A stretch of DNA of 63,849 nucleotides, the filler included, from Octopus bimaculoides (Eukaryota): the NCBI RefSeq assembly GCF_001194135.2. It is 6 parts of 6 records of this genome, joined end to end, with 100 filler letters (N's around TTAATTAATTAA, not from the genome) between each part and the next. Parts side by side here need not be neighbours in the genome. Positions count along the whole stretch, not along the records: positions 20,379 to 31,356 come from NW_026397933.1; 5 more parts are not named here. One strand, written 5' to 3'. A model generated the notes under the pieces. That model did no database searches. It worked only from the letters and a program-made list of their open reading frames with translations, and was not told where the DNA came from. Shown piece by piece: positions 20,379 through 31,356 of this stretch; position 1 is the stretch's first letter, and every line of letters starts with the position of its first letter. A program made the translations under genes and the position numbers.

Positions 20379-20441
20379 AAAATCCCACGAAGGCCAGCCA
20401 GGCGGTACTGGCAACGGCCACGCTCAAACTGGTGCATTTTG

Positions 20442-22030
20442 TGCAGTGAGAAAAAGAAAAGGAAACATCATTATCAATAATGCAGAAAGTGGAGTGGTTT
20501 CAGAGACTTGATCGTGGTGTGTCTGTGTGGTGGCTTGGTGAAGAATATGGTTGCGGAACTAGCATTGTGTATGACTTAAAGAAACAGAAAAACAAATTAC
20601 TGAAGTTTTATAGTGAGAGTGATTATTACAATCTAAGGGAAAATAGGAAAATACTAGATAGGGCAAAAAAAAAAATGAAGATCTTGACTGTCTGGTGATA
20701 GAATGGATTCAACAACGAAGAAGGAAACATATGCCATTGGATGGTTTGTTGGTCGTGAAACAAGTTAGAATATATCATAAAGGCGAAGACTTATTGGAGC
20801 AAGCGAAAGTGAAAGTGAAATTGTGATGGCACCTGTGCCCAGCGACGCCTTTCTGGCACTTGTGCCCGTGACATGTGTAAGGACTTTCGAGCGAGATCGT
20901 TGCCAGCGCCCATGGACCGGCTCTTGTGCGGGTGGCACATAAAATACACCATTTTGAGCATGGTCGTTGCCAGTACCTCCTGTCTGGCCTTCGTAGGATT
21001 TTCGAGCGAGATCGTTGCCAGCGCCCCTGGACTGGCTCTTGTGCGGGTGGCACATAAAATACACCAGTTTGAGCGTGGCCGTTGCCAGTACCGCCTGACT
21101 GGCCTTCGTAGGATTTTAGAGCGAGATCGTTGCCAGTGCCCCTGGACCGGCTCTTGTGCGGGTGGCACATAAAATACACCATTTTGAGCATGGCCGTTGC
21201 CAGTACCGCCTGACTGGCCTTCGTGCGGGTGACACGTAAAAGCACCCACTACACTCTCTGAGTGGTTGGCGTTAGGANNNNNNNNNNNNNNNNNNNNNNN
21301 NNNNNNNNNNNNNNNNNNNNNNNNNNNNNNNNNNNNNNNNNNNNNNNNNNNNNNNNNNNNNNNNNNNNNNNNNNNNNNNNNNNNNNNNNNNATGGACCGG
21401 CTCTTGTGCGGGTGGCACATAAAATACACCATTTTGAGCATGGCCGTTGCCAGTACCGCCTGACTGGCCTTCGTGCGGGTGACACGTAAAAGCACCCACT
21501 ACACTCTCTGAGTGGTTGGCGTTAGGAATGGCATCCAGCTGTAGAAACTCTGCCAAATCAGATTGGAGCCTGTTGTAGCCATCTGGTTTCACCAGTCCTC
21601 AGCCAAATCGTCCAACCCATGCTAGCATGGAAAGCGGATGTTAAACGACGACGATGATGATGATGATGATGAATTGAACATTGAAGGAGAGTGTTAATAT
21701 TCAGAAGTTTGTCATGGTGTAAAATATCTGAAAATCTGTGGTGAAAAAGCTTCTACTGATTATGAAACTACGGAAAATTACGTAGATGAATTTGCCAAGA
21801 TCGTATCTGATGAAAACCTTTCTCCCGAACAAATTTATAATGCTGGTGAAACAGCTTTGTACAGGCGCTATGTCCCAAGAAAAACTGTAACAACGGCAGA
21901 TGAGACAGCACCAGCAGGTTTTTAAGGATGCTAAGGATAGGTTAACTATTCTTGGGTGTGTTAATGGAGCAGGCACACACAAAGTGAAGTTGGCAGTGAT
22001 TGGGAAAAAGCCAACATTCAACATATCTGA
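20442..22030 (+). mobile_element. Tigger/pogo (CENP-B/Jerky-like) transposase fossil split by an insertion at ~20789-21670
   Basis: MQKVEWFQRLDRGVSV...GTSIVYDLKKQKNKLLKFYSESD (HTH) and EWIQQRR...MPLDG before the insert. ELNIEGEC...LKICGEK...LSPEQIYNAGETAL...[25 protein letters not shown] (DDE) after it. Confidence 0.85.
20789..21670 (+). mobile_element. Non-autonomous retroposon with an internal 115-bp tandem array and a (GAT)n tail (family D)
   Basis: gagcgagatcg recurs at 20889, 21004 and 21119 (period 115). The 3' end ggcgttagga...cccatgctagcatggaaagcgg...(GAT)n is shared with the copies at 30651, 31631 and 52609. Confidence 0.75.
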
Positions 22031-22152
22031 TTGGCGTAGTTAATTCACTTGTGGATTATTACGCAAATGCCTGGTACAGAATTTGGCCAATAACGGTTTG
22101 ATGAAAAGAATCCAAAAGATAACGAGTTTGGAAGATTTCATGTCATTAACCC

Positions 22153-22216
22153 ATCGAAACCGCGATCCTATGACCGCGAGTCCGCTGCCCTAACCACTGG
22201 GCCATTGCGCCTCCAC
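22153..22216 (-). mobile_element. tRNA-like SINE head, truncated at the B box
   Basis: Reverse complement gtggaggcgcaatggcccagtggttagggcagcggactcgcggtcataggatcgcggtttcgat, the same head as 16624-16690. Confidence 0.75.
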
Positions 22217-23076
22217 TCTCTATAGAAATATTATGGTAATATGTATCCCTGTAATTGTGGATCATGTATTCTTGTTATTTGTGATGTTAATTATCTCATT
22301 ATTTCTTTTCCCATTATATTACTCTACAAGTGGANNNNNNNNNNNNNNNNNNNNNNNNNNNNNNNNNNNNNNNNNNNNNNNNNNNNNNNNNNNNNNNNNN
22401 NNNNNNNNNNNNNNNNNNNNNNNNNNNNNNNNNNNNNNNNNNNNNNNNNNNNNNNNNNNNNNNNNNNNNNNNNNNNNNNNNNNNNNNNNNNNNNNNNNNN
22501 NNNNNNNNNNNNNNNNNNNNNNNNNNNNNNNNNNNNNNNNNNNNNNNNNNNNNNNNNNNNNNNNNNNNNNNNNNNNNNNNNNNNNNNNNNNNNNNNNNNN
22601 NNNNNNNNNNNNNNNNNNNNNNNNNNNNNNNNNNNNNNNNNNNNNNNNNNNNNNNNNNNNNNNNNNNNNNNNNNNNNNNNNNNNNNNNNNNNNNNNNNNN
22701 NNNNNNNNNNNNNNNNNNNNNNNNNNNNNNNNNNNNNNNNNNNNNNNNNNNNNNNNNNNNNNNNNNNNNNNNNNNNNNNNNNNNNNNNNNNNNNNNNNNN
22801 NNNNNNNNNNNNNNNNNNNNNNNNNNNNNNNNNNNNNNNNNNNNNNNNNNNNNNNNNNNNNNNNNNNNNNNNNNNNNNNNNNNNNNNNNNNNNNNNNNNN
22901 NNNNNNNNNNNNNNNNNNNNNNNGTCCATATAAGATTTCACAGAAAAATTCAATGAGATATTTAAATATCCTTGTATTGTGCATAGTGTTGGCAATCTTG
23001 ATGATGAAAATTTGCAGGTAGCAAAGGAATATAGTCAGATTGGAGCTGCTTTGTGTGTGTGTGTGAAGGGAGTTCA

Positions 23077-26000
23077 TTACGAATAGGGGATTATTAATGT
23101 TAGGATGAACCGGTTGGCATTGTTTTGGTTAGATTCTTCACACACACGTGGATAACTGGGCCTGGGTTGGTCTGTAGTCCGGGCTGTCCCAAATGGACAT
23201 CGAATTTCATGTTGGGAGTCAGTCAAGTGTGGAGGGTCAACGTCTGTTACTAATTCGGAATCGGAGACGTGTCCATGGTCATCCCGTGTTTCAGCTCGGG
23301 GATTGAATGGGTGTTGATGGTTGACGTCGTCAGTTTTGAACTGGGGCCGAGAGATGTGTTGATGGTCAGTTTGCGCTACACTACAGGAGTCGTCCTTGGT
23401 CTTGCACTGAGGCAAATATTGGACCGTACCACATTGACGGTCAGTCTGGGTTTCTGACATGAGATTCGACATATTCCAATGCTCGGTGTCTCTTCCAGCG
23501 AGAAGTTCAGTAAATAGATGAGAACTGGGCACAGATTCAATCTGGAAATCGGACATACAGTGTGGCTGTAGCTTAACCGTATGCTGATGGTCAGTTTTAC
23601 CTTTCTGCTCAAGTTCAGCGTTGGCCTCTTCAGATTGCTTAGTTTCATTCTTGACCTGGCATGTGGTCACACTACCACATGGCCTAGACTCTACTTCAGG
23701 CCGGAGGCTCACTGCATGCTGGTGCTTAGTTTCACCCCCACCCCCACATTCTTTGTCAGTCTTCTCAAACTGGAGCTTGGCCAGAGATGGGTACCTAATC
23801 CCGATTTGAGGAGCTCTCTTAAACAGATATTCTCTCCCAGGCTTGCACTCACTCTCAAGCTCATACTCGCTCTCAAACTCGTACTCAGTTTCCGTGTCAA
23901 ACTGAAGTTCAGCCAGGGTTTCACACCAAGTCTTGGTCTCAACATGATACGATGCCTCAGACTCAGTATCCGTCTCAAACTGAAGCTCAGCCATGAGTTG
24001 ATCACTGCTCTCAGTATCTGATTTGCACATGTACTGAGTCGTGTATTCTGGCCTAATGCAGCCCTCAACCAGAGCCACATGCTCGTCTTTGCACTCAGTC
24101 CCAATCTGGAGTCCGGTCGCGTGCAGGTCACTCTTTACCGTTTTGAGCCAACTCTCACTGCCATGCTCACACTTCCTCTCAGGTATGTATCGATGCTGAG
24201 TATGTTGCCGAAGAAGGGTCTCGGAGGCGTGCCACTGAGGCTTAGCTGCAGTCCGGTTATACTTCAGTTTGTGGGCGTGCCAGAGTTCAGGCTCAGACTG
24301 GTACACACTATCTCTTCCAAGCTCAATCTTGGTTATGTGATCACACACAGCATAAGACTTAAATTTAAGGTGGATGTCAGTGTCCGAATCAGCCTCATGC
24401 TGGTGCTCACGCATGCGCAGAAGCTCAGCTTCAAGATCATGTTCGTGATGATGAGGTTCGGGCTCATGCAGTTGGTCAATGTCAGTCTTCGGCTCATACT
24501 TGGTTATGGTCACGTTATTATACTCAGGCTCAGAAGAATGTCGAGACTCAGGCTCAGTCTTGTGCTGAAAGTCAGGTTTGGCTTCATGCGATTGTGGTGG
24601 AGTCACATTCTTGAGCTGGACTTCAGTCACGTGGCGGTGGTCAGTGCTGGTCATGTGTTTGTGTTTGGTTTCGGTTACAATCTGCAGCTTGGTCAAGTGC
24701 TGAGACACAAACTCAAGCTGGAGGTCCGTCACGTGCTCACAGTCAGTCTCAAGTTGGAATTCGCTCAAACGCTGACATGCTGTCTTCAGCTGGAGTTCGG
24801 TCACATGCTGATGCTCAGCGTCAGTTGCAAGCTGGAGTTTGGTCACATGATGGTGCCCAAGCTCAAATTCAAGTTCAACATCGGTCTGAGTCTCCATCTC
24901 AGTCTGCAGTTTGGCCTCTGGTTCAGACACTTTATGTGGCAGCTCAAGGTCAGGCTCAGACCGAGGTTTCATTTCAATCTCATATTGAGTCTCAGGTTCA
25001 GTCTCAACAGGCTTAAGCTCTGGTTGAACCACAGGCTCAAGCTTAGGCTGGAGAACAGGCTGAGGCTGAGACTGGAGAACAGGCTCAGGCTCAGGTTGAA
25101 GATCAGGTTCGTGTTCAAGAATAGGCTCAGATACTGGTTCTAGCTTAGGCTCAGATACTGGTTCTAGCTTAGGCTCAGATACTGGTTCTAGCTTAGGCTC
25201 AGATACTGGTTCTAGCTTAGGCTCAGATACTGGTTCTAGCTTAGGCTTAAATTGGCGTTTTACCACAGTCTTTTTTGGGTCCTTGCTCACAAGCTGGGGC
25301 TCAGACACAGGTTGAGGTTCAGCACTGGTCCCCTGTTGAGGCTGGGGCTGGGTCACGGGTGTATCTGGGGCTGGTGGCATTTCATACTCAATCTCAGGCT
25401 GAAAATACATCTTGGGTCCTTGTTCAGGTTCAAGATCAGGCTTAACCACAGTTTTCTTTTTGTCCTTGATCTCAAGCTGAGGTTTATTAGGTACAGGCTG
25501 AGCTTCAGCACCAGTCCCCTGTTGAGGCTGGGCCAGGGGTTCATCTGGAGCCGGTGGCATATCATACTCAATTTCAGGCTGAAAATACATCTTGGGTGCG
25601 AGTTCTTGTGGTTTAGTATCATGCTGTATGGGCTCAGGTGAGGGAATTCTGTGGTGCCGGAGCTCAGGTGTGGACTTGCCGCTATGCTGGATCTCTGGCC
25701 TAGGCTCACTGTATTCACTATCAGGTTCAGACTGGTATTTGATTTTGGTCTCTGGCTTCTGAGGGAGCTCACTGCTAGATGGGAACTCTAGCTCAGGATA
25801 AGCCTCAACATCAGGTTCTAAATAGTATGAAATCTTGGATTCAGGCTTACGTGGGGGTGAGCCAGGCTCACAGTATTCAATATCAGGTTGAGACTGGTAT
25901 TCGATCTTGCTCTCTGGCTCCAGTGGGGGCTCACTGCTAGACGGGAAGCCTATCTGCGGATAAGCCTCAACATCAGGTTCTAAATAGTATGTGATCTTGG

Positions 26001-28098
26001 ATTCAGGCTTATGTGGGGGTAAGCCATCACGCTGTATCTCTGGCCCAGGCTCATGGTATTGAACATCAGGTTGAGACTGGTATTTGATCTTGGTCTCTGG
26101 CTCCAGTGGGGGCTCACTGCTAGATGGGAATGCTAGTTCAGGATAAGCTTCAACATTAGGTTCTAAGCTGTATGTAATCTTAGGGTCAGGCTTAAGTGGG
26201 GGTAAGCCATTTCGCTGGACCTCTGGCTCAGGCTGACGGTATTGAATATCAGGTTGAGACTGGTATTTGATCTTGGATTCTGGCTTTTGTGGCGGCTCAC
26301 TGCTAGATGGGAATGTTAGTTCAGGATAAGCTTCAACATCAGGTTCTAAGGTGTATGTAATCTTAGGGTCAGGCTTACGTGGGTGTAGGCCATTTCGCTG
26401 GACCTCTGGCTCAGGCTCACGGTATTGAACATCAGGTTGAGACTGGTATTTGATCTTGGATTCTGGCTCTAGTGGGAGCTCACTGCTAGATGGGAATGCT
26501 ATCTCAGGATAAGCTTCAACATCAGGTTCTAAGGTGTATGTAATCTTAGGGTCAGGCTTACGTGGGGGTAGGCCATTTTGATGGACCTCTGGCCCAGGTT
26601 CCCGGTATTCAATATCAGGTTGAGATTGGTATTTGATCTTGGTCTCTGGCTCCAGTGGGGACTCACTGCTAGATGGGAATGCTATCTCAGGATAAACTTC
26701 AAGATTAGAATCTAAATAGTATGTAATCTTGGATTCAGGCTTACGTTGGGGTGGGCCATATCGCTGGACCTCTGGCCCAGGCTTACGGTATTCAATATCA
26801 GGTTGAGACTGGTATTTGATCTTGGTCTCTGTCTCCAGTGGGGGCTCACTGCTAGACGGGAAGCCTATCTCAGGATAAGCCTCAACATCAGGTTCTAAAG
26901 TGTATGTAATCTTGGATTCAGGCTTATATGGGGAACGCCCATCACGTTGGATCTCTGGCTCCTGTTGGGGCTCACTGCTAGAGGGGAACTCTATTTCAGG
27001 AAGAGCCTCAACATTAGGTTCTAAGTAGTATGTAATCTTAGACTCAGACTTATGTGGAGGTGTGCTGGTACGCTGGATCTCTGGCCAATCTGGGAGTGGG
27101 CCATTGGGCTGGATCTCTAGCTCCCGTTGGGGCTCACTGCTAGATGGGAACTCTAGCTCAGGAAAAGCGCTAACATCAGGTTCTAAGTGGTATGTAATCT
27201 TAGATTCAGACTTATGTAAGAGTGGGCCATTTCGCTGTATCTCTGGCCCAGGCTCACGGTATTCAATATCAGGTTGAGACTGGTATTTGATTTTGGTCTC
27301 TGACTCCGGTAGGGGCTCACTGCTAGACGGGAAGCCTATCTGCGGATAAGCCTCAACATTAGATTCTAAATAGTATGTAATCTTGGATTCAGGCTTGGAT
27401 TCAGGTGGGCCATTTCGTTGGATCTCCAGCTCCTGTTGTTGGGGATCAATGCTAGATGGGAACTCCAGTTCTGGATAAGCTTGAACATTAGTTTCTAAGT
27501 AGTATGTAATCTTAGGTTCAGGCCTTTGTGGAGGTGGGCTATTTCGCTGAACAGGTGGTGGTGGGCTATTTCGCTGAACAGGTAGAGGTGGGCTATTTCG
27601 CTGAACAGGTGGAGACGTGCTTTGGCGCTCGGTGCTGGTGTAGTGAATGTTTGATGGAAACTGATACTTAACTTTGGTCATGGGATCAGGTAAAGGTTTC
27701 CTGCCTTGTGGAGTTTTGGCTTCCGGGTAGTATGTTATGTCAGATTTCTGGTTGTAATACTCCACACCAAACTCAGGCGGAAGTTCACTGTATTTCTGAT
27801 ATTCCTTGGTAACCAGTTTCGACTTTAGCAACAGCTTTATCATATTCAACACGTCCTTTTTCGTGTAATCACCATCACGCTTTTGTTTCTTCTTGCGACG
27901 AGGACGTCTGCGACGAGACTTGCCTTTCGCAGTCTTCTCCTCAGACTCGCTGTCATAAATATAATTCATCAGGTTTACTTGGTGTGACGAGTCTGCTGCT
28001 TCCCCAACACATTTTGCGAACACATGGTAAAACAAATACAGGAACAACACAATTCCGAAAACATCAAACTCTAAGCTGTTTAACACATACATGTCCAT
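23077..28098 (-). CDS. Uncharacterised 1673-aa Pro/Glu/Tyr-rich tandem-repeat protein, single long ORF
   Basis: 5022-bp stop-free frame with an in-frame stop 10 codons upstream of the ATG. N-terminal hydrophobic segment, Arg/Lys cluster, 11 copies of a ~61-aa repeat whose length variants all preserve frame, a 60-aa duplication, (PVSEPKLE)x5 and a His/Thr/Glu-rich C-terminus. Confidence 0.8.
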   Translation of the reverse strand: MDMYVLNSLEFDVFGIVLFLYLFYHVFAKCVGEAADSSHQVNLMNYIYDSESEEKTAKGKSRRRRPRRKKKQKRDGDYTKKDVLNMIKLLLKSKLVTKEYQKYSELPPEFGVEYYNQKSDITYYPEAKTPQGRKPLPDPMTKVKYQFPSNIHYTSTERQSTSPPVQRNSPPLPVQRNSPPPPVQRNSPPPQRPEPKITYYLETNVQAYPELEFPSSIDPQQQELEIQRNGPPESKPESKITYYLESNVEAYPQIGFPSSSEPLPESETKIKYQSQPDIEYREPGPEIQRNGPLLHKSESKITYHLEPDVSAFPELEFPSSSEPQRELEIQPNGPLPDWPEIQRTSTPPHKSESKITYYLEPNVEALPEIEFPSSSEPQQEPEIQRDGRSPYKPESKITYTLEPDVEAYPEIGFPSSSEPPLETETKIKYQSQPDIEYRKPGPEVQRYGPPQRKPESKITYYLDSNLEVYPEIAFPSSSESPLEPETKIKYQSQPDIEYREPGPEVHQNGLPPRKPDPKITYTLEPDVEAYPEIAFPSSSELPLEPESKIKYQSQPDVQYREPEPEVQRNGLHPRKPDPKITYTLEPDVEAYPELTFPSSSEPPQKPESKIKYQSQPDIQYRQPEPEVQRNGLPPLKPDPKITYSLEPNVEAYPELAFPSSSEPPLEPETKIKYQSQPDVQYHEPGPEIQRDGLPPHKPESKITYYLEPDVEAYPQIGFPSSSEPPLEPESKIEYQSQPDIEYCEPGSPPRKPESKISYYLEPDVEAYPELEFPSSSELPQKPETKIKYQSEPDSEYSEPRPEIQHSGKSTPELRHHRIPSPEPIQHDTKPQELAPKMYFQPEIEYDMPPAPDEPLAQPQQGTGAEAQPVPNKPQLEIKDKKKTVVKPDLEPEQGPKMYFQPEIEYEMPPAPDTPVTQPQPQQGTSAEPQPVSEPQLVSKDPKKTVVKRQFKPKLEPVSEPKLEPVSEPKLEPVSEPKLEPVSEPKLEPVSEPILEHEPDLQPEPEPVLQSQPQPVLQPKLEPVVQPELKPVETEPETQYEIEMKPRSEPDLELPHKVSEPEAKLQTEMETQTDVELEFELGHHHVTKLQLATDAEHQHVTELQLKTACQRLSEFQLETDCEHVTDLQLEFVSQHLTKLQIVTETKHKHMTSTDHRHVTEVQLKNVTPPQSHEAKPDFQHKTEPESRHSSEPEYNNVTITKYEPKTDIDQLHEPEPHHHEHDLEAELLRMREHQHEADSDTDIHLKFKSYAVCDHITKIELGRDSVYQSEPELWHAHKLKYNRTAAKPQWHASETLLRQHTQHRYIPERKCEHGSESWLKTVKSDLHATGLQIGTECKDEHVALVEGCIRPEYTTQYMCKSDTESSDQLMAELQFETDTESEASYHVETKTWCETLAELQFDTETEYEFESEYELESECKPGREYLFKRAPQIGIRYPSLAKLQFEKTDKECGGGGETKHQHAVSLRPEVESRPCGSVTTCQVKNETKQSEEANAELEQKGKTDHQHTVKLQPHCMSDFQIESVPSSHLFTELLAGRDTEHWNMSNLMSETQTDRQCGTVQYLPQCKTKDDSCSVAQTDHQHISRPQFKTDDVNHQHPFNPRAETRDDHGHVSDSELVTDVDPPHLTDSQHEIRCPFGTARTTDQPRPSYPRVCEESNQNNANRFILTLIIPYS

Positions 28099-28360
28099 AC
28101 ACGCACAAATACAAAATGAAAATATTCATAAATTATTTAGACACTTTACAGTGCAATCTAGAATTGTACGTTTGTTTCTCTTCTTCTATTCCTCTTCTGG
28201 TCTTCTGCAATTATTTGTTTTATTTTCCTTCTTTCTGTCTGGTTGTACTCTTTTTACCTTGTCTATTCCTATCTTAATTTCTCCTCCTCTTAAATTCCTT
28301 TCCTATTTTCTTCAGTCCTGTTTTTTTATTCACCTTTTTCCCTCTGAATTTATTTTTTCT

Positions 28361-29100
28361 TCCTCTTCAATTCCTCCAGACTTCTTTTCCTTTCCTCTTC
28401 AATTTCTCTGGTCTAATTTTCCCCTAGTTTTCCCTTTCTCTTCAATTCCTCCAGCCTTCTTTTCCCTTCCTCTTCAATTCCTCCAGACTTCTTTTCCCTT
28501 CCTCTTCAATTTCTCTGGTCTAATTTTCCCCTTCTCTTCAATTGCTCCAGCCTTCTTTTCCCTTTCTCTTCAATTCCTCCAGCCTTCTTTTCCCTTCCTC
28601 TTCAATTCCTCCAGACTTCTTTTTCCCTTCCTCTTCAATTTCTCTGGTCTAATTTTCCCTTTCTCTTCAATTCCTCCAGCCTTCTTTTCCCTTTCTCTTC
28701 AATTCCTCCAGCCTTCTTTTCCCTTCCTCTTCAATTCCTCCAGCCTTATTTTATCCTTCCTCTTCAATTCCTCCAGTTTAATTTCTTCTTCCTCCAATCT
28801 AATTTTGTCCCAGTCTTTTCAATTCCTCCAGTTTAATTTCTTCTTCCTCCAATCTAATTTTGTCCCAGTCTTTTCAATTCCTCCAGTTTAATNNNNNNNN
28901 NNCTTCAATTCCTCCAGTTTAATTTCTTCTTCCTCCAATCTAATTTTGTCCCAGTCTTTTCAATTCCTCCAGTTTAATTTCTTCTTCCACCAATCTAATT
29001 TTGTCCCAGCCTTTTCAATTCCTCCAGTTTAATTTCTTCTTCCTCCAATCTAATTTTGTCCCAGCCTTTTCAATTCCTCCAGTTTAATTTCTTCCTCTTC
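28361..29100. repeat. Pyrimidine/purine-skewed minisatellite: ~12 x 32-bp units followed by 55-bp units
   Basis: Unit aattcctccagccttcttttcccttcctcttc (32 bp). aatttcttct recurs at 28921 and 28976 (55 bp). Confidence 0.9.
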
Positions 29101-30650
29101 AGTTCTTCCAATCTTATGCCTCCTTTCTCTTCAGTTCCCCAAGTCTTATCTTTCCTTCTATCCTTCTTATTTCGTTCGTTTCTGTTTCCTCGGTTTTGCG
29201 TTTCTTTTACTTTTCCTTCTTGTTCAAAATTTCGATGTTTTGCCCTCCCCAATCCAACTCTCCTGTCTTTTAGTCTAACCTTTCTTCTCTTTCGTATACA
29301 TTTCTTTTTCCCCTGTTTTCCCGTCTTTTCTTTCTTACCCTCCACTTAACTCAGTACCGACATCATCACCCCTATGTCGGTAGCTCACTCTCTATCACTT
29401 TATATATATATATATATATATATATACCTTCTTATCTCTTTATATTTACGATAATATATATGTAGTATATTTGATACTTTTTCCTCAATTTTTGTGAGGA
29501 AAAAAATAGCGAAAACAAAAATTAATGAATACGAAAAACGATAAAAATAATTCACCCCCGGGTCGATCTTACTTCTTTTTCTTTTTCATTTCAATCCAGA
29601 AAAATAAAGAAAATCTTTAAATCCACAATTCCAGGNNNNNNNNNNNNNNNNNNNNNNNNNNNNNNNNNNNNNNNNNNNNNNNNNNNNNNNNNNNNNNNNN
29701 NNNNNNNNNNNNNNNNNNNNNNNNNNNNNNNNNNNNNNNNNNNNNNNNNNNNNNNNNNNNNNNNNNNNNNNNNNNNNNNNNNNNNNNNNNNNNNNNNNNN
29801 NNNNNNNNNNNNNNNNNNNNNNNNNNNNNNNNNNNNNNNNNNNNNNNNNNNNNNNNNNNNNNNNNNNNNNNNNNNNNNNNNNNNNNNNNNNNNNNNNNNN
29901 NNNNNNNNNNNNNNNNNNNNNNNNNNNNNNNNNNNNNNNNNNNNNNNNNNNNNNNNNNNNNNNNNNNNNNNNNNNNNNNNNNNNNNNNNNNNNNNNNNNN
30001 NNNNNNNNNNNNNNNNNNNNNNNNNNNNNNNNNNNNNNNNNNNNNNNNNNNNNNNNNNNNNNNNNNNNNNNNNNNNNNNNNNNNNNNNNNNNNNNNNNNN
30101 NNNNNNNNNNNNNNNNNNNNNNNNNNNNNNNNNNNNNNNNNNNNNNNNNNNNNNNNNNNNNNNNNNNNNNNNNNNNNNNNNNNNNNNNNNNNNNNNNNNN
30201 NNNNNNNNNNNNNNNNNNNNNNNNNNNNNNNNNNNNNNNNNNNNNNNNNNNNNNNNNNNNNNNNNNNNNNNNNNNNNNNNNNNNNNNNNNNNNNNNNNNN
30301 NNNNNNNNNNNNNNNNNNNNNNNNNNNNNNNNNNNNNNNNNNNNNNNNNNNNNNNNNNNNNNNNNNNNNNNNNNNNNNNNNNNNNNNNNNNNNNNNNNNN
30401 NNNNNNNNNNNNNNNNNNNNNNNNNNNNNNNNNNNNNNNNNNNNNNNNNNNNNNNNNNNNNNNNNNNNNNNNNNNNNNNNNNNNNNNNNNNNNNNNNNNN
30501 NNNNNNNNNNNNNNNNNNNNNNNNNNNNNNNNNNNNNNNNNNNNNNNNNNNNNNTCAAAATCGGACTCCAACGCCCTAACATCATGGTTCACCTATATCT
30601 ACCCCACATCTATTCCATCAACATTTGAAATACTCCACTCTAGTCCCATC

Positions 30651-30795
30651 ATCATCATCATTTAACGTCCGTTTTCCATGCTGGCATGGGTTGGACGGTT
30701 CGACTGAAAACTGGTAAGCCGGATGGGGCTGCACCAGGTTCCGTTCTTGTTTTGGCAAGTTTTCTACGGTTGAATGCCCTTCCTAATGCCGACCA
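30651..30795 (-). mobile_element. Family D retroposon 3' end with (GAT)n tail
   Basis: Reverse complement of ...ccaacccatgccagcatggaaaacggacgttaaatgatgatgat. Confidence 0.65.
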
Positions 30796-31356
30796 CTCCA
30801 AGAGTGTAGTGGGTGTCATTGACCTGACATTAGCATCCATCATTACTATGGTCTCACTTGGCTTGACAGGTCTACACAAGCATGGCATATCGCCAAAGGT
30901 CTCGGTCACCTGTTACTGCCTCCATGGGGTCCAACACTTGAACAGCGCCTTTTACNNNNNNNNNNTTGTCCCATCTTCGTTGAGCCCTGTGTGGCTAATA
31001 AAAGAAATGTATATTGTACCAAACAGATAGTCTAGAGCCCTCTCCCCAATTTCTTTCTGTTCTTAGTATTTAAAATGCTCCCAAGGCTTTGAAGTATTGA
31101 GAAAAAAAAAAAATTGTCTACGATCACCAAAACAGCACAACATTTAACAGAAGTCAACAAATGCGGTACGCTATTCTCTAAATAGACCTCTATATTGTAC
31201 TTGAAGCCCTACTTTTCAAAATCGGACTCCAACGCCCTAACATCATGGTTCACCTATATCTACCCCACATCTATTCCATCAACATTTGAAATACTCCACT
31301 CTAGTCCCATCATCATCATCATTTAACGTCCGTTTTCCATGCTGGCATGGGTTGGA

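What the first reader, a model, noticed from the sequence alone, without database searches (positions are those of the whole stretch)
23077..28098. Orphan 1673-aa intronless tandem-repeat protein in a TE desert island
Seen: 5 kb with no stop, no microsatellite and no TE insertion, in a window otherwise saturated with them. It has a modular build: hydrophobic N-terminus, basic cluster, (PVQRNSPP)x3, 11 x ~61-aa units, 2 x 60-aa units, 5 x 8-aa units and a His/Thr/Glu-rich tail. A shared submotif K[IM]xYxx[EQ]P[DE][IV]EY runs through several modules. I recognise no known family: it is not Gly-rich like suckerins or beak His-rich proteins, and lacks the reflectin Met/Asp motif. Inference: a lineage-specific, largely disordered structural or scaffold protein (e.g. 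gamete, egg-case or extracellular material), possibly the most novel gene here.
Basis: partly seen in the sequence, partly recalled or inferred. Interest (0 to 1): 0.8.

Follow-up and report, generated by a model that had tools for sequence, protein, structure and literature searches.

The report
Octopus-only repetitive disordered protein gene
This is a real, single-exon Octopus gene for a 1673-residue, acidic, proline/glutamate/tyrosine-rich repeat protein, found at high depth in only one organism-A RNA run, with no detectable relatives outside close octopus species; databases already hold it under the misleading name "titin-like", and its function is still unknown.

Summary
It is a real gene. 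One RNA run of the same species (X12) holds it colinear with the genome at word depth 350-1300. 12 other indexed RNA runs of that species hold 0-3% of its words, and three raw-read runs laid on its ends give near-zero depth. A close congener (organism B) expresses an orthologue. All 12 listed indels inside its CDS are multiples of 3; the 1-nt indels lie in the 5'UTR. Selection is purifying but uneven: 11 synonymous to 2 non-synonymous changes in the N-terminal 86 codons, 25:15 and 13:27 in two parts of the tail.

It matches no Pfam family and no PDB chain. In 1.84 billion representative proteins, residues 474-1673 match only their own cluster plus low-complexity noise. It is not unannotated: RefSeq calls it "titin-like isoform X1/X2". 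That name reflects PEVK-like composition only. "Isoform X2" is a genomic allele with a 48-nt deletion, not a splice form.

My best reading is a lineage-restricted, largely disordered modular scaffold or matrix protein, targeted by a conserved N-terminal hydrophobic segment. The expressing tissue could not be decoded, so the gamete/egg-case idea is untested. Interest is moderate.

The parts
23077..28098 (-). Complete CDS, 1673 codons including ATG and TAA. Single exon.
27841..28098 (-). Conserved N-terminal 86 codons: acidic n-region, hydrophobic segment (aa 13-28), then the polybasic cluster KGKSRRRRPRRKKKQKR (aa 58-74).
   Evidence: Against organism B there are 11 synonymous and 2 non-synonymous changes plus one 1-codon insertion. 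The ATG is kept. This is the only hydrophobic window in the protein.
27528..27614 (-). 27-nt x3.2 coding repeat (PVQRNSPPx).
   Evidence: Organism B is 54 nt (2 units) shorter here.
25675..27534 (-). Array of 11 units (aa 189-808). Seven are full 61-aa (183-nt) units, each made of two ~30-aa half-units.
   Evidence: Pooled pN/pS between units is 0.63.
25237..25596 (-). Two 60-aa units (aa 835-954) containing PKMYFQPEIEY.
25122..25247 (-). 24-nt x5.2 perfect coding repeat (KLEPVSEP x5), followed downstream in the protein by a degenerate PE/VLQP stretch. This is the PEVK-like segment (61% P+E+V+K over aa 955-1075).
   Evidence: Organism B is 96 nt (4 units) shorter. This segment drew all 155 low-complexity hits.
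23080..24873 (-). C-terminal tail (aa 1076-1673): His 8%, Thr 10%, Glu 12%, 18 Cys, and about 12 copies of the [H]x[VL][TA][EK]LQ[LFI]xT[DE] motif.
   Evidence: Against organism B: 25 synonymous to 15 non-synonymous (codons 1118-1298) and 13 to 27 (codons 1320-1665). AF2 mean pLDDT 33.8.
24226..24273 (-). 48-nt in-frame indel polymorphism between 9-nt direct repeats. Its absence gives RefSeq 'isoform X2'.
   Evidence: No GT..AG in any of the 10 possible registers. The deletion is present in DNA run X8 and in RNA run X12, with linked SNPs at 23567 and 23576. Organism B has the long form.
22994..23076 (-). 3'UTR of at least 83 nt. It begins with a short (CA)n.
   Evidence: The X12 RNA contig ends at 22994, while DNA contigs run on past it.
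28099..29425 (-). Probable long 5'UTR. It is colinear to 28388, then runs through a purine-rich 32/55-nt satellite (28360-29158) to a unique stretch (29076-29425) that ends at (TA)13.
   Evidence: X12 pieces have depth 328-357, like the CDS. There are 4 uATGs in 1327 nt. Continuity across the satellite is inferred, not shown.

Best explanation
A genuine, single-exon gene restricted to a narrow octopus lineage. The piece is the whole 10,978-bp contig LGKD02103066.1 of Octopus bimaculoides, and the RefSeq model is named 'titin-like'. It encodes a 1673-aa acidic modular protein that is mostly intrinsically disordered.

Shown:
- High word depth in one RNA run of the species, with 0-3% of its words in the 12 other indexed RNA runs listed and near-zero depth at the ORF's two ends in three raw-read runs.
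- An expressed orthologue in a close congener, with the reading frame preserved at every listed indel.
- Strong purifying selection on the N-terminal 86 residues and weaker, uneven constraint on the tail.
- Rapid gain and loss of short coding repeats.

Inferred mechanism:
- The conserved N-terminal hydrophobic segment takes the protein into the secretory pathway, as a cleaved signal (VFA|K or CVG|E satisfy the -3/-1 rule) or as an anchor.
- The conserved polybasic run that follows could be a furin-type processing site.
- The ~900-residue Pro/Glu/Ser/Tyr/Lys/Gln-rich arrays form an extended, hydrated, PEVK-like spacer or matrix. They are built from a ~30-aa module, PE[ST]KIxY..PD[VI]EY. The matrix could be cross-linked through its 79 Tyr (peroxidase) or its Gln/Lys (transglutaminase).
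- The His/Cys/Thr/Glu tail, with about 12 amphipathic HxHVTxLQLxTD strand-like motifs, would mediate self-association or metal binding.

The most plausible setting is a specialised secreted material of one organ. A reproductive one is possible but untested.
For: Real gene:
- ORF statistics.
- RNA run X12 word depth 350-1300, with zero depth over non-repeat flanks.
- The RNA listing shows 0-3% of the gene's words in 12 other organism-A runs. Three raw-read RNA runs (X27-29) give near-zero depth over the ORF's two ends, which is all that was laid for them.
- Organism B RNA word depth about 99 and 63.
- All 12 listed CDS indels are multiples of 3 (9, 6, 18, 6, 12, 6, 3, 3, 3, 45, 96, 54). The 1-nt indels fall at 28186 and 28217 in the 5'UTR. 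The chance of 12 in-frame out of 12 is about 2e-6.
- No sampled substitution creates a stop.

Selection: N-terminus 11 synonymous to 2 non-synonymous, omega about 0.05. Tail 38 to 42 over 80 sampled sites, omega about 0.3.

Lineage restriction: Pfam none; PDB only low-complexity hits; the exhaustive search of aa 474-1673 found only the self cluster plus hits confined to the KLEPVSEP/PE stretch, and the four inspected were unrelated repeats.

Disorder: 55-66% disorder-promoting residues in the arrays. AF2 pLDDT 41 with no secondary structure for four units, and 34 for the tail.

Targeting: a single hydrophobic window at the N-terminus, conserved in organism B.
Against: - The tissue of the expressing run is unknown.
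- No signal-peptide predictor was available. The n-region is net negative (D2, E10, D12), which is atypical for cleaved signal peptides and fits a signal anchor with a cytoplasmic C-terminus about equally well.
- The polybasic run is also a textbook nuclear localisation signal.
- AF2 without an alignment often gives low confidence even for folded proteins, so 'disordered' rests mainly on composition.
- N-glycosylation sequons are not enriched (5, against about 3-4 expected; my estimate from the tail's Asn, Ser and Thr content).
- The strand of transcription is inferred from the ORF, because contigs have no direction.
- Cross-linking and metal binding are pure inference from composition.
Confidence: 0.5

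Rival explanations
1. A membrane-tethered cytoplasmic spacer or tether. The N-terminal segment is an uncleaved signal anchor with the N-terminus outside and the C-terminus in the cytosol, as in cytochrome P450 or synaptotagmin. The polybasic cluster sits on the cytosolic face, and the long acidic PEVK-like chain projects into the cytoplasm from an organelle or plasma membrane.
For: The n-region is net negative, and the downstream flank plus the aa 58-74 cluster is strongly positive. By the positive-inside / charge-difference rule (established knowledge), this favours a cytosolic C-terminus. The hydrophobic stretch is 16 uncharged residues. Both the hydrophobic stretch and the basic cluster are strongly conserved. 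Cys and His together in the tail would suit cytosolic zinc binding.
Against: Sixteen residues is short for a transmembrane helix. Good -3/-1 cleavage sites exist. There is no localisation evidence of any kind.
Confidence: 0.2
2. A soluble nuclear or perinuclear protein. The basic cluster acts as a nuclear localisation signal, and the hydrophobic N-terminus is not a targeting signal.
For: RRRRPRRKKKQKR matches classical NLS patterns and is conserved.
Against: The conserved, very hydrophobic Phe/Leu/Tyr-rich N-terminal segment would be unexplained. A net charge of about -120 over the rest of the protein is unlike chromatin-binding proteins.
Confidence: 0.07
3. A true member of the titin/connectin family, as the RefSeq name suggests: a muscle elastic filament protein.
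For: The RefSeq name. 61% P+E+V+K over aa 955-1075, and a module size (~30 aa) like the 28-aa PPAK module.
Against: There is no Ig, FN3, kinase or PPAK Pfam match even at E<=1. The only similarity in 1.84 billion proteins is low-complexity. A single exon of 5 kb and an N-terminal hydrophobic signal are both unlike titin. It is absent from most RNA runs, whereas muscle is present in most octopus tissue samples (the muscle point is inference).
Confidence: 0.02
4. An expressed satellite or lncRNA whose open frame is a by-product of tandem repetition.
For: More than half of the ORF is tandem repeats. The antisense and other frames also show 140-354-aa open stretches. pN/pS between units is only 0.63.
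Against: The 598-codon non-repetitive tail and the 188-codon N-terminus are open too (P about 1e-13 and 2e-5). 12 of 12 listed interspecies indels are in frame. There is a third-position excess of substitutions in the N-terminus and the proximal tail.
Confidence: 0.02

Closest known systems
Titin PEVK segment (PPAK modules and poly-E)
   Same: Pro/Glu/Val/Lys-rich composition, tandem ~28-30-aa modules, no predicted stable fold, and in-frame expansion and contraction of modules. This is the source of the RefSeq name 'titin-like'.
   Different: No Pfam PPAK, Ig, FN3 or kinase match. Tyr/Ser/Gln-rich rather than Val/Lys-rich in the main array (42% PEVK). Has an N-terminal hydrophobic targeting segment. 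Single exon. This is an analogy of composition, not homology.
Cross-linked repetitive matrix substrates (fish choriogenin Pro-Gln repeats, involucrin/SPRR, semenogelins, insect chorion proteins)
   Same: Single large exon, short Pro/Gln/Lys/Glu- or Tyr-rich tandem repeats, fast repeat turnover, and expression restricted to one tissue. These points about the known proteins come from my own knowledge and were not tested here.
   Different: No sequence similarity was detected. There is no ZP or other folded domain. Cross-linking is purely hypothetical here.
Cephalopod structural repeat proteins (suckerins, reflectins, His-rich beak proteins)
   Same: Cephalopod-restricted, modular and repetitive, with high tissue-specific expression.
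   Different: Gly 2.7% and Gly+Ala+His 9.6%. No reflectin [MF]D(X5)MD(X5)MD motif, and only one 'MD' dipeptide. The composition is acidic Pro/Glu/Tyr.
Taxonomically restricted ('orphan') genes in general
   Same: No detectable homologue beyond close congeners, a simple gene structure, disorder-rich sequence, and narrow expression.
   Different: It is unusually long (1673 aa). One part, the N-terminal 86 aa, is under strong purifying selection (omega about 0.05).

Membership tests
Titin/connectin | Ig (I-set) and fibronectin-III domains; C-terminal kinase | tested here: not met
   Pfam hmmscan of the whole protein at E<=1 gave 0 families.
Titin/connectin | PPAK/PEVK modules recognisable by profile | tested here: not met
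   No Pfam hit at all, so none to the PPAK model that I recall Pfam-A holding. The P+E+V+K fraction is 38% overall and 61% only in aa 955-1075.
Suckerin | Gly/Tyr/Leu-rich and Ala/His/Thr-rich alternating modules | tested here: not met
   Gly 2.7%, Ala 3.1%.
Reflectin | Repeated [MF]-D-X5-M-D-X5-M-D motif; Met-rich | tested here: not met
   The regex finds none. Met is 1.1%.
Histidine-rich beak proteins | Gly/Ala/His-dominated repeats | tested here: not met
   Gly+Ala+His is 9.6% overall and 15% in the tail.
Taxonomically restricted protein-coding gene | No homologue detectable outside a narrow lineage | tested here: met
   phmmer of aa 474-1673 against 1.84 billion representatives found only the self cluster plus low-complexity hits. 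Pfam and PDB gave nothing. Limit: aa 1-473 were searched only through the word-indexed tool, whose negatives are weak.
Taxonomically restricted protein-coding gene | Transcribed, with the frame conserved in a sister species | tested here: met
Secreted protein with cleavable signal peptide | N-terminal hydrophobic h-region with small residues at -3/-1 | tested here: met
   aa 13-28 VFGIVLFLYLFYHVFA, with VFA|K and CVG|E by inspection. The segment is conserved in organism B.
Secreted protein with cleavable signal peptide | Positively charged n-region; positive call by a trained predictor | tested here: not met
   The n-region MDMYVLNSLEFD is net negative. A predictor such as SignalP was not available, so that half of the feature could not be tested.
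Intrinsically disordered tandem-repeat protein | Low-complexity, disorder-promoting composition and no confident fold | tested here: met
   55-66% P/E/S/Q/K/R/G in the arrays. AF2 pLDDT 41 with no secondary structure for 4 units, and 34 for the tail. Single-sequence AF2 is weak evidence.

The most novel reading that the evidence does not exclude
The protein is the main building block of an octopus-specific extracellular material made by one organ, for example a spermatophore, egg-envelope or cuticle component. In that reading a lineage-born ~30-aa Pro/Glu/Tyr module acts as a PEVK-like entropic spring, and the His/Cys tail sets it by metal or oxidative cross-links. This would be a new class of elastomeric biomaterial protein with no relatives outside octopods.
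Probability: 0.2. Interest if true: 0.6.

Novelty: new member of a known kind. Interest (0 to 1): 0.36.

Why it matters
Three points make it useful.

1. It corrects an annotation. The RefSeq name 'titin-like' comes from composition only, and 'isoform X2' is an allele, not a splice form.

2. It is a clean example of a long, highly expressed, lineage-restricted gene with different selective regimes side by side. The targeting end is strongly constrained, the tail moderately constrained, and the short repeat arrays change copy number between sister species. That makes it a usable case for studying how repeat proteins are born and maintained in cephalopods.

3. If the expressing organ makes a special material, the protein would be a candidate new structural biopolymer.

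As it stands, it is an uncharacterised, already-modelled gene of a familiar general kind, not a new kind of system.

Tried and rejected
- Splice isoform for the 48-nt skip: rejected. No GT..AG in any register, and the same junction occurs in a DNA run.
- A 45-nt 'skip' in organism B RNA as an intron: rejected. Organism B's DNA contig carries the same junction.
- The look-up of encoding contigs for the 1657-aa form: not on record. The 1673-aa form gave only the same 11-kb contig, so no wider genomic context exists.
- The search for homologous proteins with the tail alone and with aa 1-190: nothing, not even the self protein, so these negatives are uninformative.
- dN/dS inside the 61-aa array against organism B: abandoned, because paralogous units cross-map.
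- Identifying the expressing tissue: six literature searches returned no mention of the gene and a seventh failed on a term limit. Five octopus transcriptome or proteome papers contain no 'titin'. The 2015 genome paper is not held. Run names are coded, and no marker-gene locus could be fetched with the allowed tools.
- 2026 raw-read RNA runs: near-zero depth at the ORF's two ends, so they give no strand or 5'-end information.
- Fold search was not run, because both models have pLDDT below 45.
- Rfam: no match on the piece.
Full report
**Observation.** The piece (20379-31356) is the whole 10,978-bp contig LGKD02103066.1 of the Octopus bimaculoides assembly GCA_001194135.2. On its minus strand an ORF runs from the ATG at 28098 to the TAA at 23077, 1673 codons. 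This is not chance:
- The non-repetitive 598-codon tail alone has P(open) about 1e-13 from its own base composition. 1000 shuffles never gave more than 235 open codons.
- The other five frames contain 46-259 stops.
- GC at codon positions 1/2/3 is 0.60/0.38/0.45.

**Modules.**
- A single hydrophobic window at aa 13-28.
- A polybasic run at aa 58-74.
- PVQRNSPPx x3.2 (27-nt period).
- 11 KI[TS]Y-anchored units. Seven are 61 aa (183 nt, 88% DNA identity in TRF). Four are shortened to 54, 54, 43 and 42 aa.
- Two 60-aa units.
- Five perfect KLEPVSEP units (24 nt, 100% identical).
- A His/Thr/Glu/Cys-rich tail.

Two things can be added. The 61-aa unit is itself two ~30-aa half-units sharing PE[ST]KI[TK]Y..PD[VI]E (shuffle p<0.0005), with degenerate copies at aa 107-153 (p about 0.004). 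The tail holds about 12 dispersed copies of a strand-like motif, HxHVTxLQLxTD.

**Is it a gene?** Yes.
- One RNA run of the same species (X12) holds 91% of the ORF's 31-mers at word depth 350-1300. Its contigs are colinear with the genome from 22994 to 25151 and from 27367 to 28388. Shorter pieces cover the internal array, where the assembly breaks on the repeats.
- Unique flanking DNA (20477-20770, 21751-22142) has zero depth in the same run, so this is RNA and not contaminating DNA.
- 12 other organism-A RNA runs in the listing (11 RNA-labelled plus X7, whose kind is unknown) hold 0-3% of the words. Three raw-read RNA runs of 2026 give near-zero depth over the ORF's two ends, the only parts laid for them. 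Expression is therefore strong and narrowly restricted.
- A second species (organism B; about 5% nucleotide divergence in the tail, and up to about 13% in the first array units) has RNA contigs of the orthologue at depth about 99 and 63.
- All 12 indel events listed inside the CDS are multiples of three: +9, -6, +18, +6, -12, -6, +3, +3, +3, -45, -96, -54. The 1-nt insertions lie at 28186 and 28217 in the 5'UTR. Eight further indel rows were not shown.
- None of the 93 sampled coding substitutions creates a stop.

**Selection is uneven.**
- N-terminal 86 codons: 11 synonymous and 2 non-synonymous changes (omega about 0.05). The ATG, the hydrophobic segment and the basic cluster are all kept. 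The adjacent 5'UTR has 10 substitutions in 162 nt.
- Tail codons 1118-1298: 25 synonymous to 15 non-synonymous, with codon positions 7/8/25.
- Tail codons 1320-1665: 13 to 27.
- Pooled over the tail, omega is about 0.3, using 377 synonymous and 1417 non-synonymous sites.
- Between the seven full units inside the gene, pN/pS is 0.63.
- A direct interspecies estimate in the array failed because paralogous units cross-map.

**Gene structure.**
- The only 'joint' in the RNA is a 48-nt skip (24226-24273). It has no GT..AG in any of its 10 equivalent registers and is flanked by a 9-nt direct repeat.
- The same junction, with the same two linked SNPs (Q1511L, V1508A), is present in a genomic DNA run (X8). 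It is absent from three others. Organism B has the long form.
- So RefSeq 'isoform X2' (XP_014789825.1 / XP_052834280.1, 1657 aa) is a derived deletion allele, not a splice variant. The CDS is intronless.
- The 45-nt difference in organism B is likewise genomic.
- Short arrays differ between the species by whole units: 4 KLEPVSEP units, 2 PVQRNSPPx units and one tail motif.
- Upstream of the ATG, X12 pieces with gene-like depth (328-357) continue through a purine-rich 32/55-nt satellite to 29425. This suggests a 5'UTR of at least 1.3 kb with only four uATGs. Continuity across the satellite is inferred.

**Relatives.**
- Pfam: no hit at E<=1.
- PDB sequences: only low-complexity matches, such as circumsporozoite protein at E 1e-3.
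- Exhaustive phmmer of aa 474-1673 against 1.84 billion representatives: the self cluster at E=0, plus 155 hits that all align only to aa ~949-1038, the KLEPVSEP/PE-rich stretch. The four I inspected are unrelated repeat proteins. Nothing matches the 61-aa array or the tail.
- The word-indexed search with the full protein found only the RefSeq 'titin-like' entry. With sub-fragments it did not even find the self protein, so those negatives carry no weight.
- The name 'titin-like' thus reflects PEVK-like composition (61% P+E+V+K in aa 955-1075, 38% overall), not homology.
- Composition and motif checks exclude suckerins, reflectins and His-rich beak proteins.

**Structure.** Single-sequence AlphaFold2 gave mean pLDDT 41.3 with no secondary structure for four units (aa 389-632), and 33.8 for the tail. 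With 55-66% disorder-promoting residues in the arrays, this fits an extended, disordered chain. AF2 without an alignment is weak evidence.

**Mechanism (inferred).** The part under the strongest constraint is the N-terminus: a hydrophobic segment followed about 30 residues later by RRRRPRRKKKQKR.
- The simplest reading is entry into the secretory pathway. VFA|K and CVG|E satisfy the -3/-1 rule, and the polybasic run could be a convertase site.
- The long acidic Pro/Glu/Tyr/Ser/Lys/Gln arrays would then act as an extended, hydrated, possibly elastic and cross-linkable matrix or spacer. The His/Cys-rich tail with amphipathic motifs would act as an assembly or metal-binding end.
- Against this, the n-region is net negative. 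By the charge-difference rule, that fits an uncleaved anchor with a cytoplasmic C-terminus about as well.
- The basic run is also a classical nuclear localisation signal. I keep both alternatives as rivals.

**What could not be settled.** The tissue of the expressing run is unknown. Run and sample names are coded, the literature searches found no mention of the gene, and five octopus transcriptome or proteome papers contain no 'titin'.

**Verdict.**
- The gene is already modelled in RefSeq, under a misleading name and with an allele mislabelled as an isoform.
- It belongs to a familiar general kind, the taxonomically restricted repetitive disordered protein.
- Interest is moderate. It would rise if the expressing organ turns out to build a special material from this protein.

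Noticed in passing
window 24226-24273, 23567, 23576: RefSeq 'titin-like isoform X2' is a genomic haplotype, not a splice isoform. It carries a 48-nt in-frame deletion between 9-nt direct repeats, plus Q1511L and V1508A. It is seen in one DNA run and in the RNA run. The congener has the long form.
   Followed up: yes
window 25122-25247, 27528-27614, 23311-23355: Short coding repeats differ by whole units between the two species: 96 nt is 4 KLEPVSEP units, 54 nt is 2 PVQRNSPPx units, and 45 nt is one tail motif. The KLEPVSEP units are 100% identical at DNA level, which suggests very recent expansion.
   Followed up: partly
window 28360-29158 (and on to 29425): A 32/55-nt satellite, purine-rich on the sense strand, lies just upstream of the ATG. 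It appears to be transcribed at gene-like depth in the expressing run. That would give a 5'UTR of at least 1.3 kb with only 4 uATGs. Its plus-strand 266-aa 'ORF' is an artefact of the CT-rich repeat.
   Followed up: partly
window 20967-21260, 21457-21652, 22143-22240, 30568-30800, 31264-31356: Flanking interspersed (SINE-like) repeats, including a 115-nt x3 tandem array, show very high depth in the four RNA runs laid on the flanks (up to about 67,000 word depth in X12) and many variant bases. They are multi-copy transcribed elements, unrelated to the gene.
   Followed up: no
organism B RNA contigs over window 23052-28400: In organism B the 3' part of the transcript has about 10 times the depth of the 5' part (99 against 10.5). 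In organism A the ratio is under 2. This could be 3' bias of the libraries or a shorter 3' isoform.
   Followed up: no
window 23077-24873 and 27529-28098 (queries): The word-indexed protein search did not return the query's own database entry when given sub-fragments, although it did with the full length. Negative results from that tool for fragments should not be trusted.
   Followed up: partly
window 21278-21391, 22335-22923, 28893-28902, 29636-30554, 30956-30965: Runs of N lie inside the piece. One starts 154 nt past the stop codon and another about 210 nt beyond the last transcribed piece at 29425. The true 3' end and the promoter region are therefore partly unreadable.
   Followed up: no
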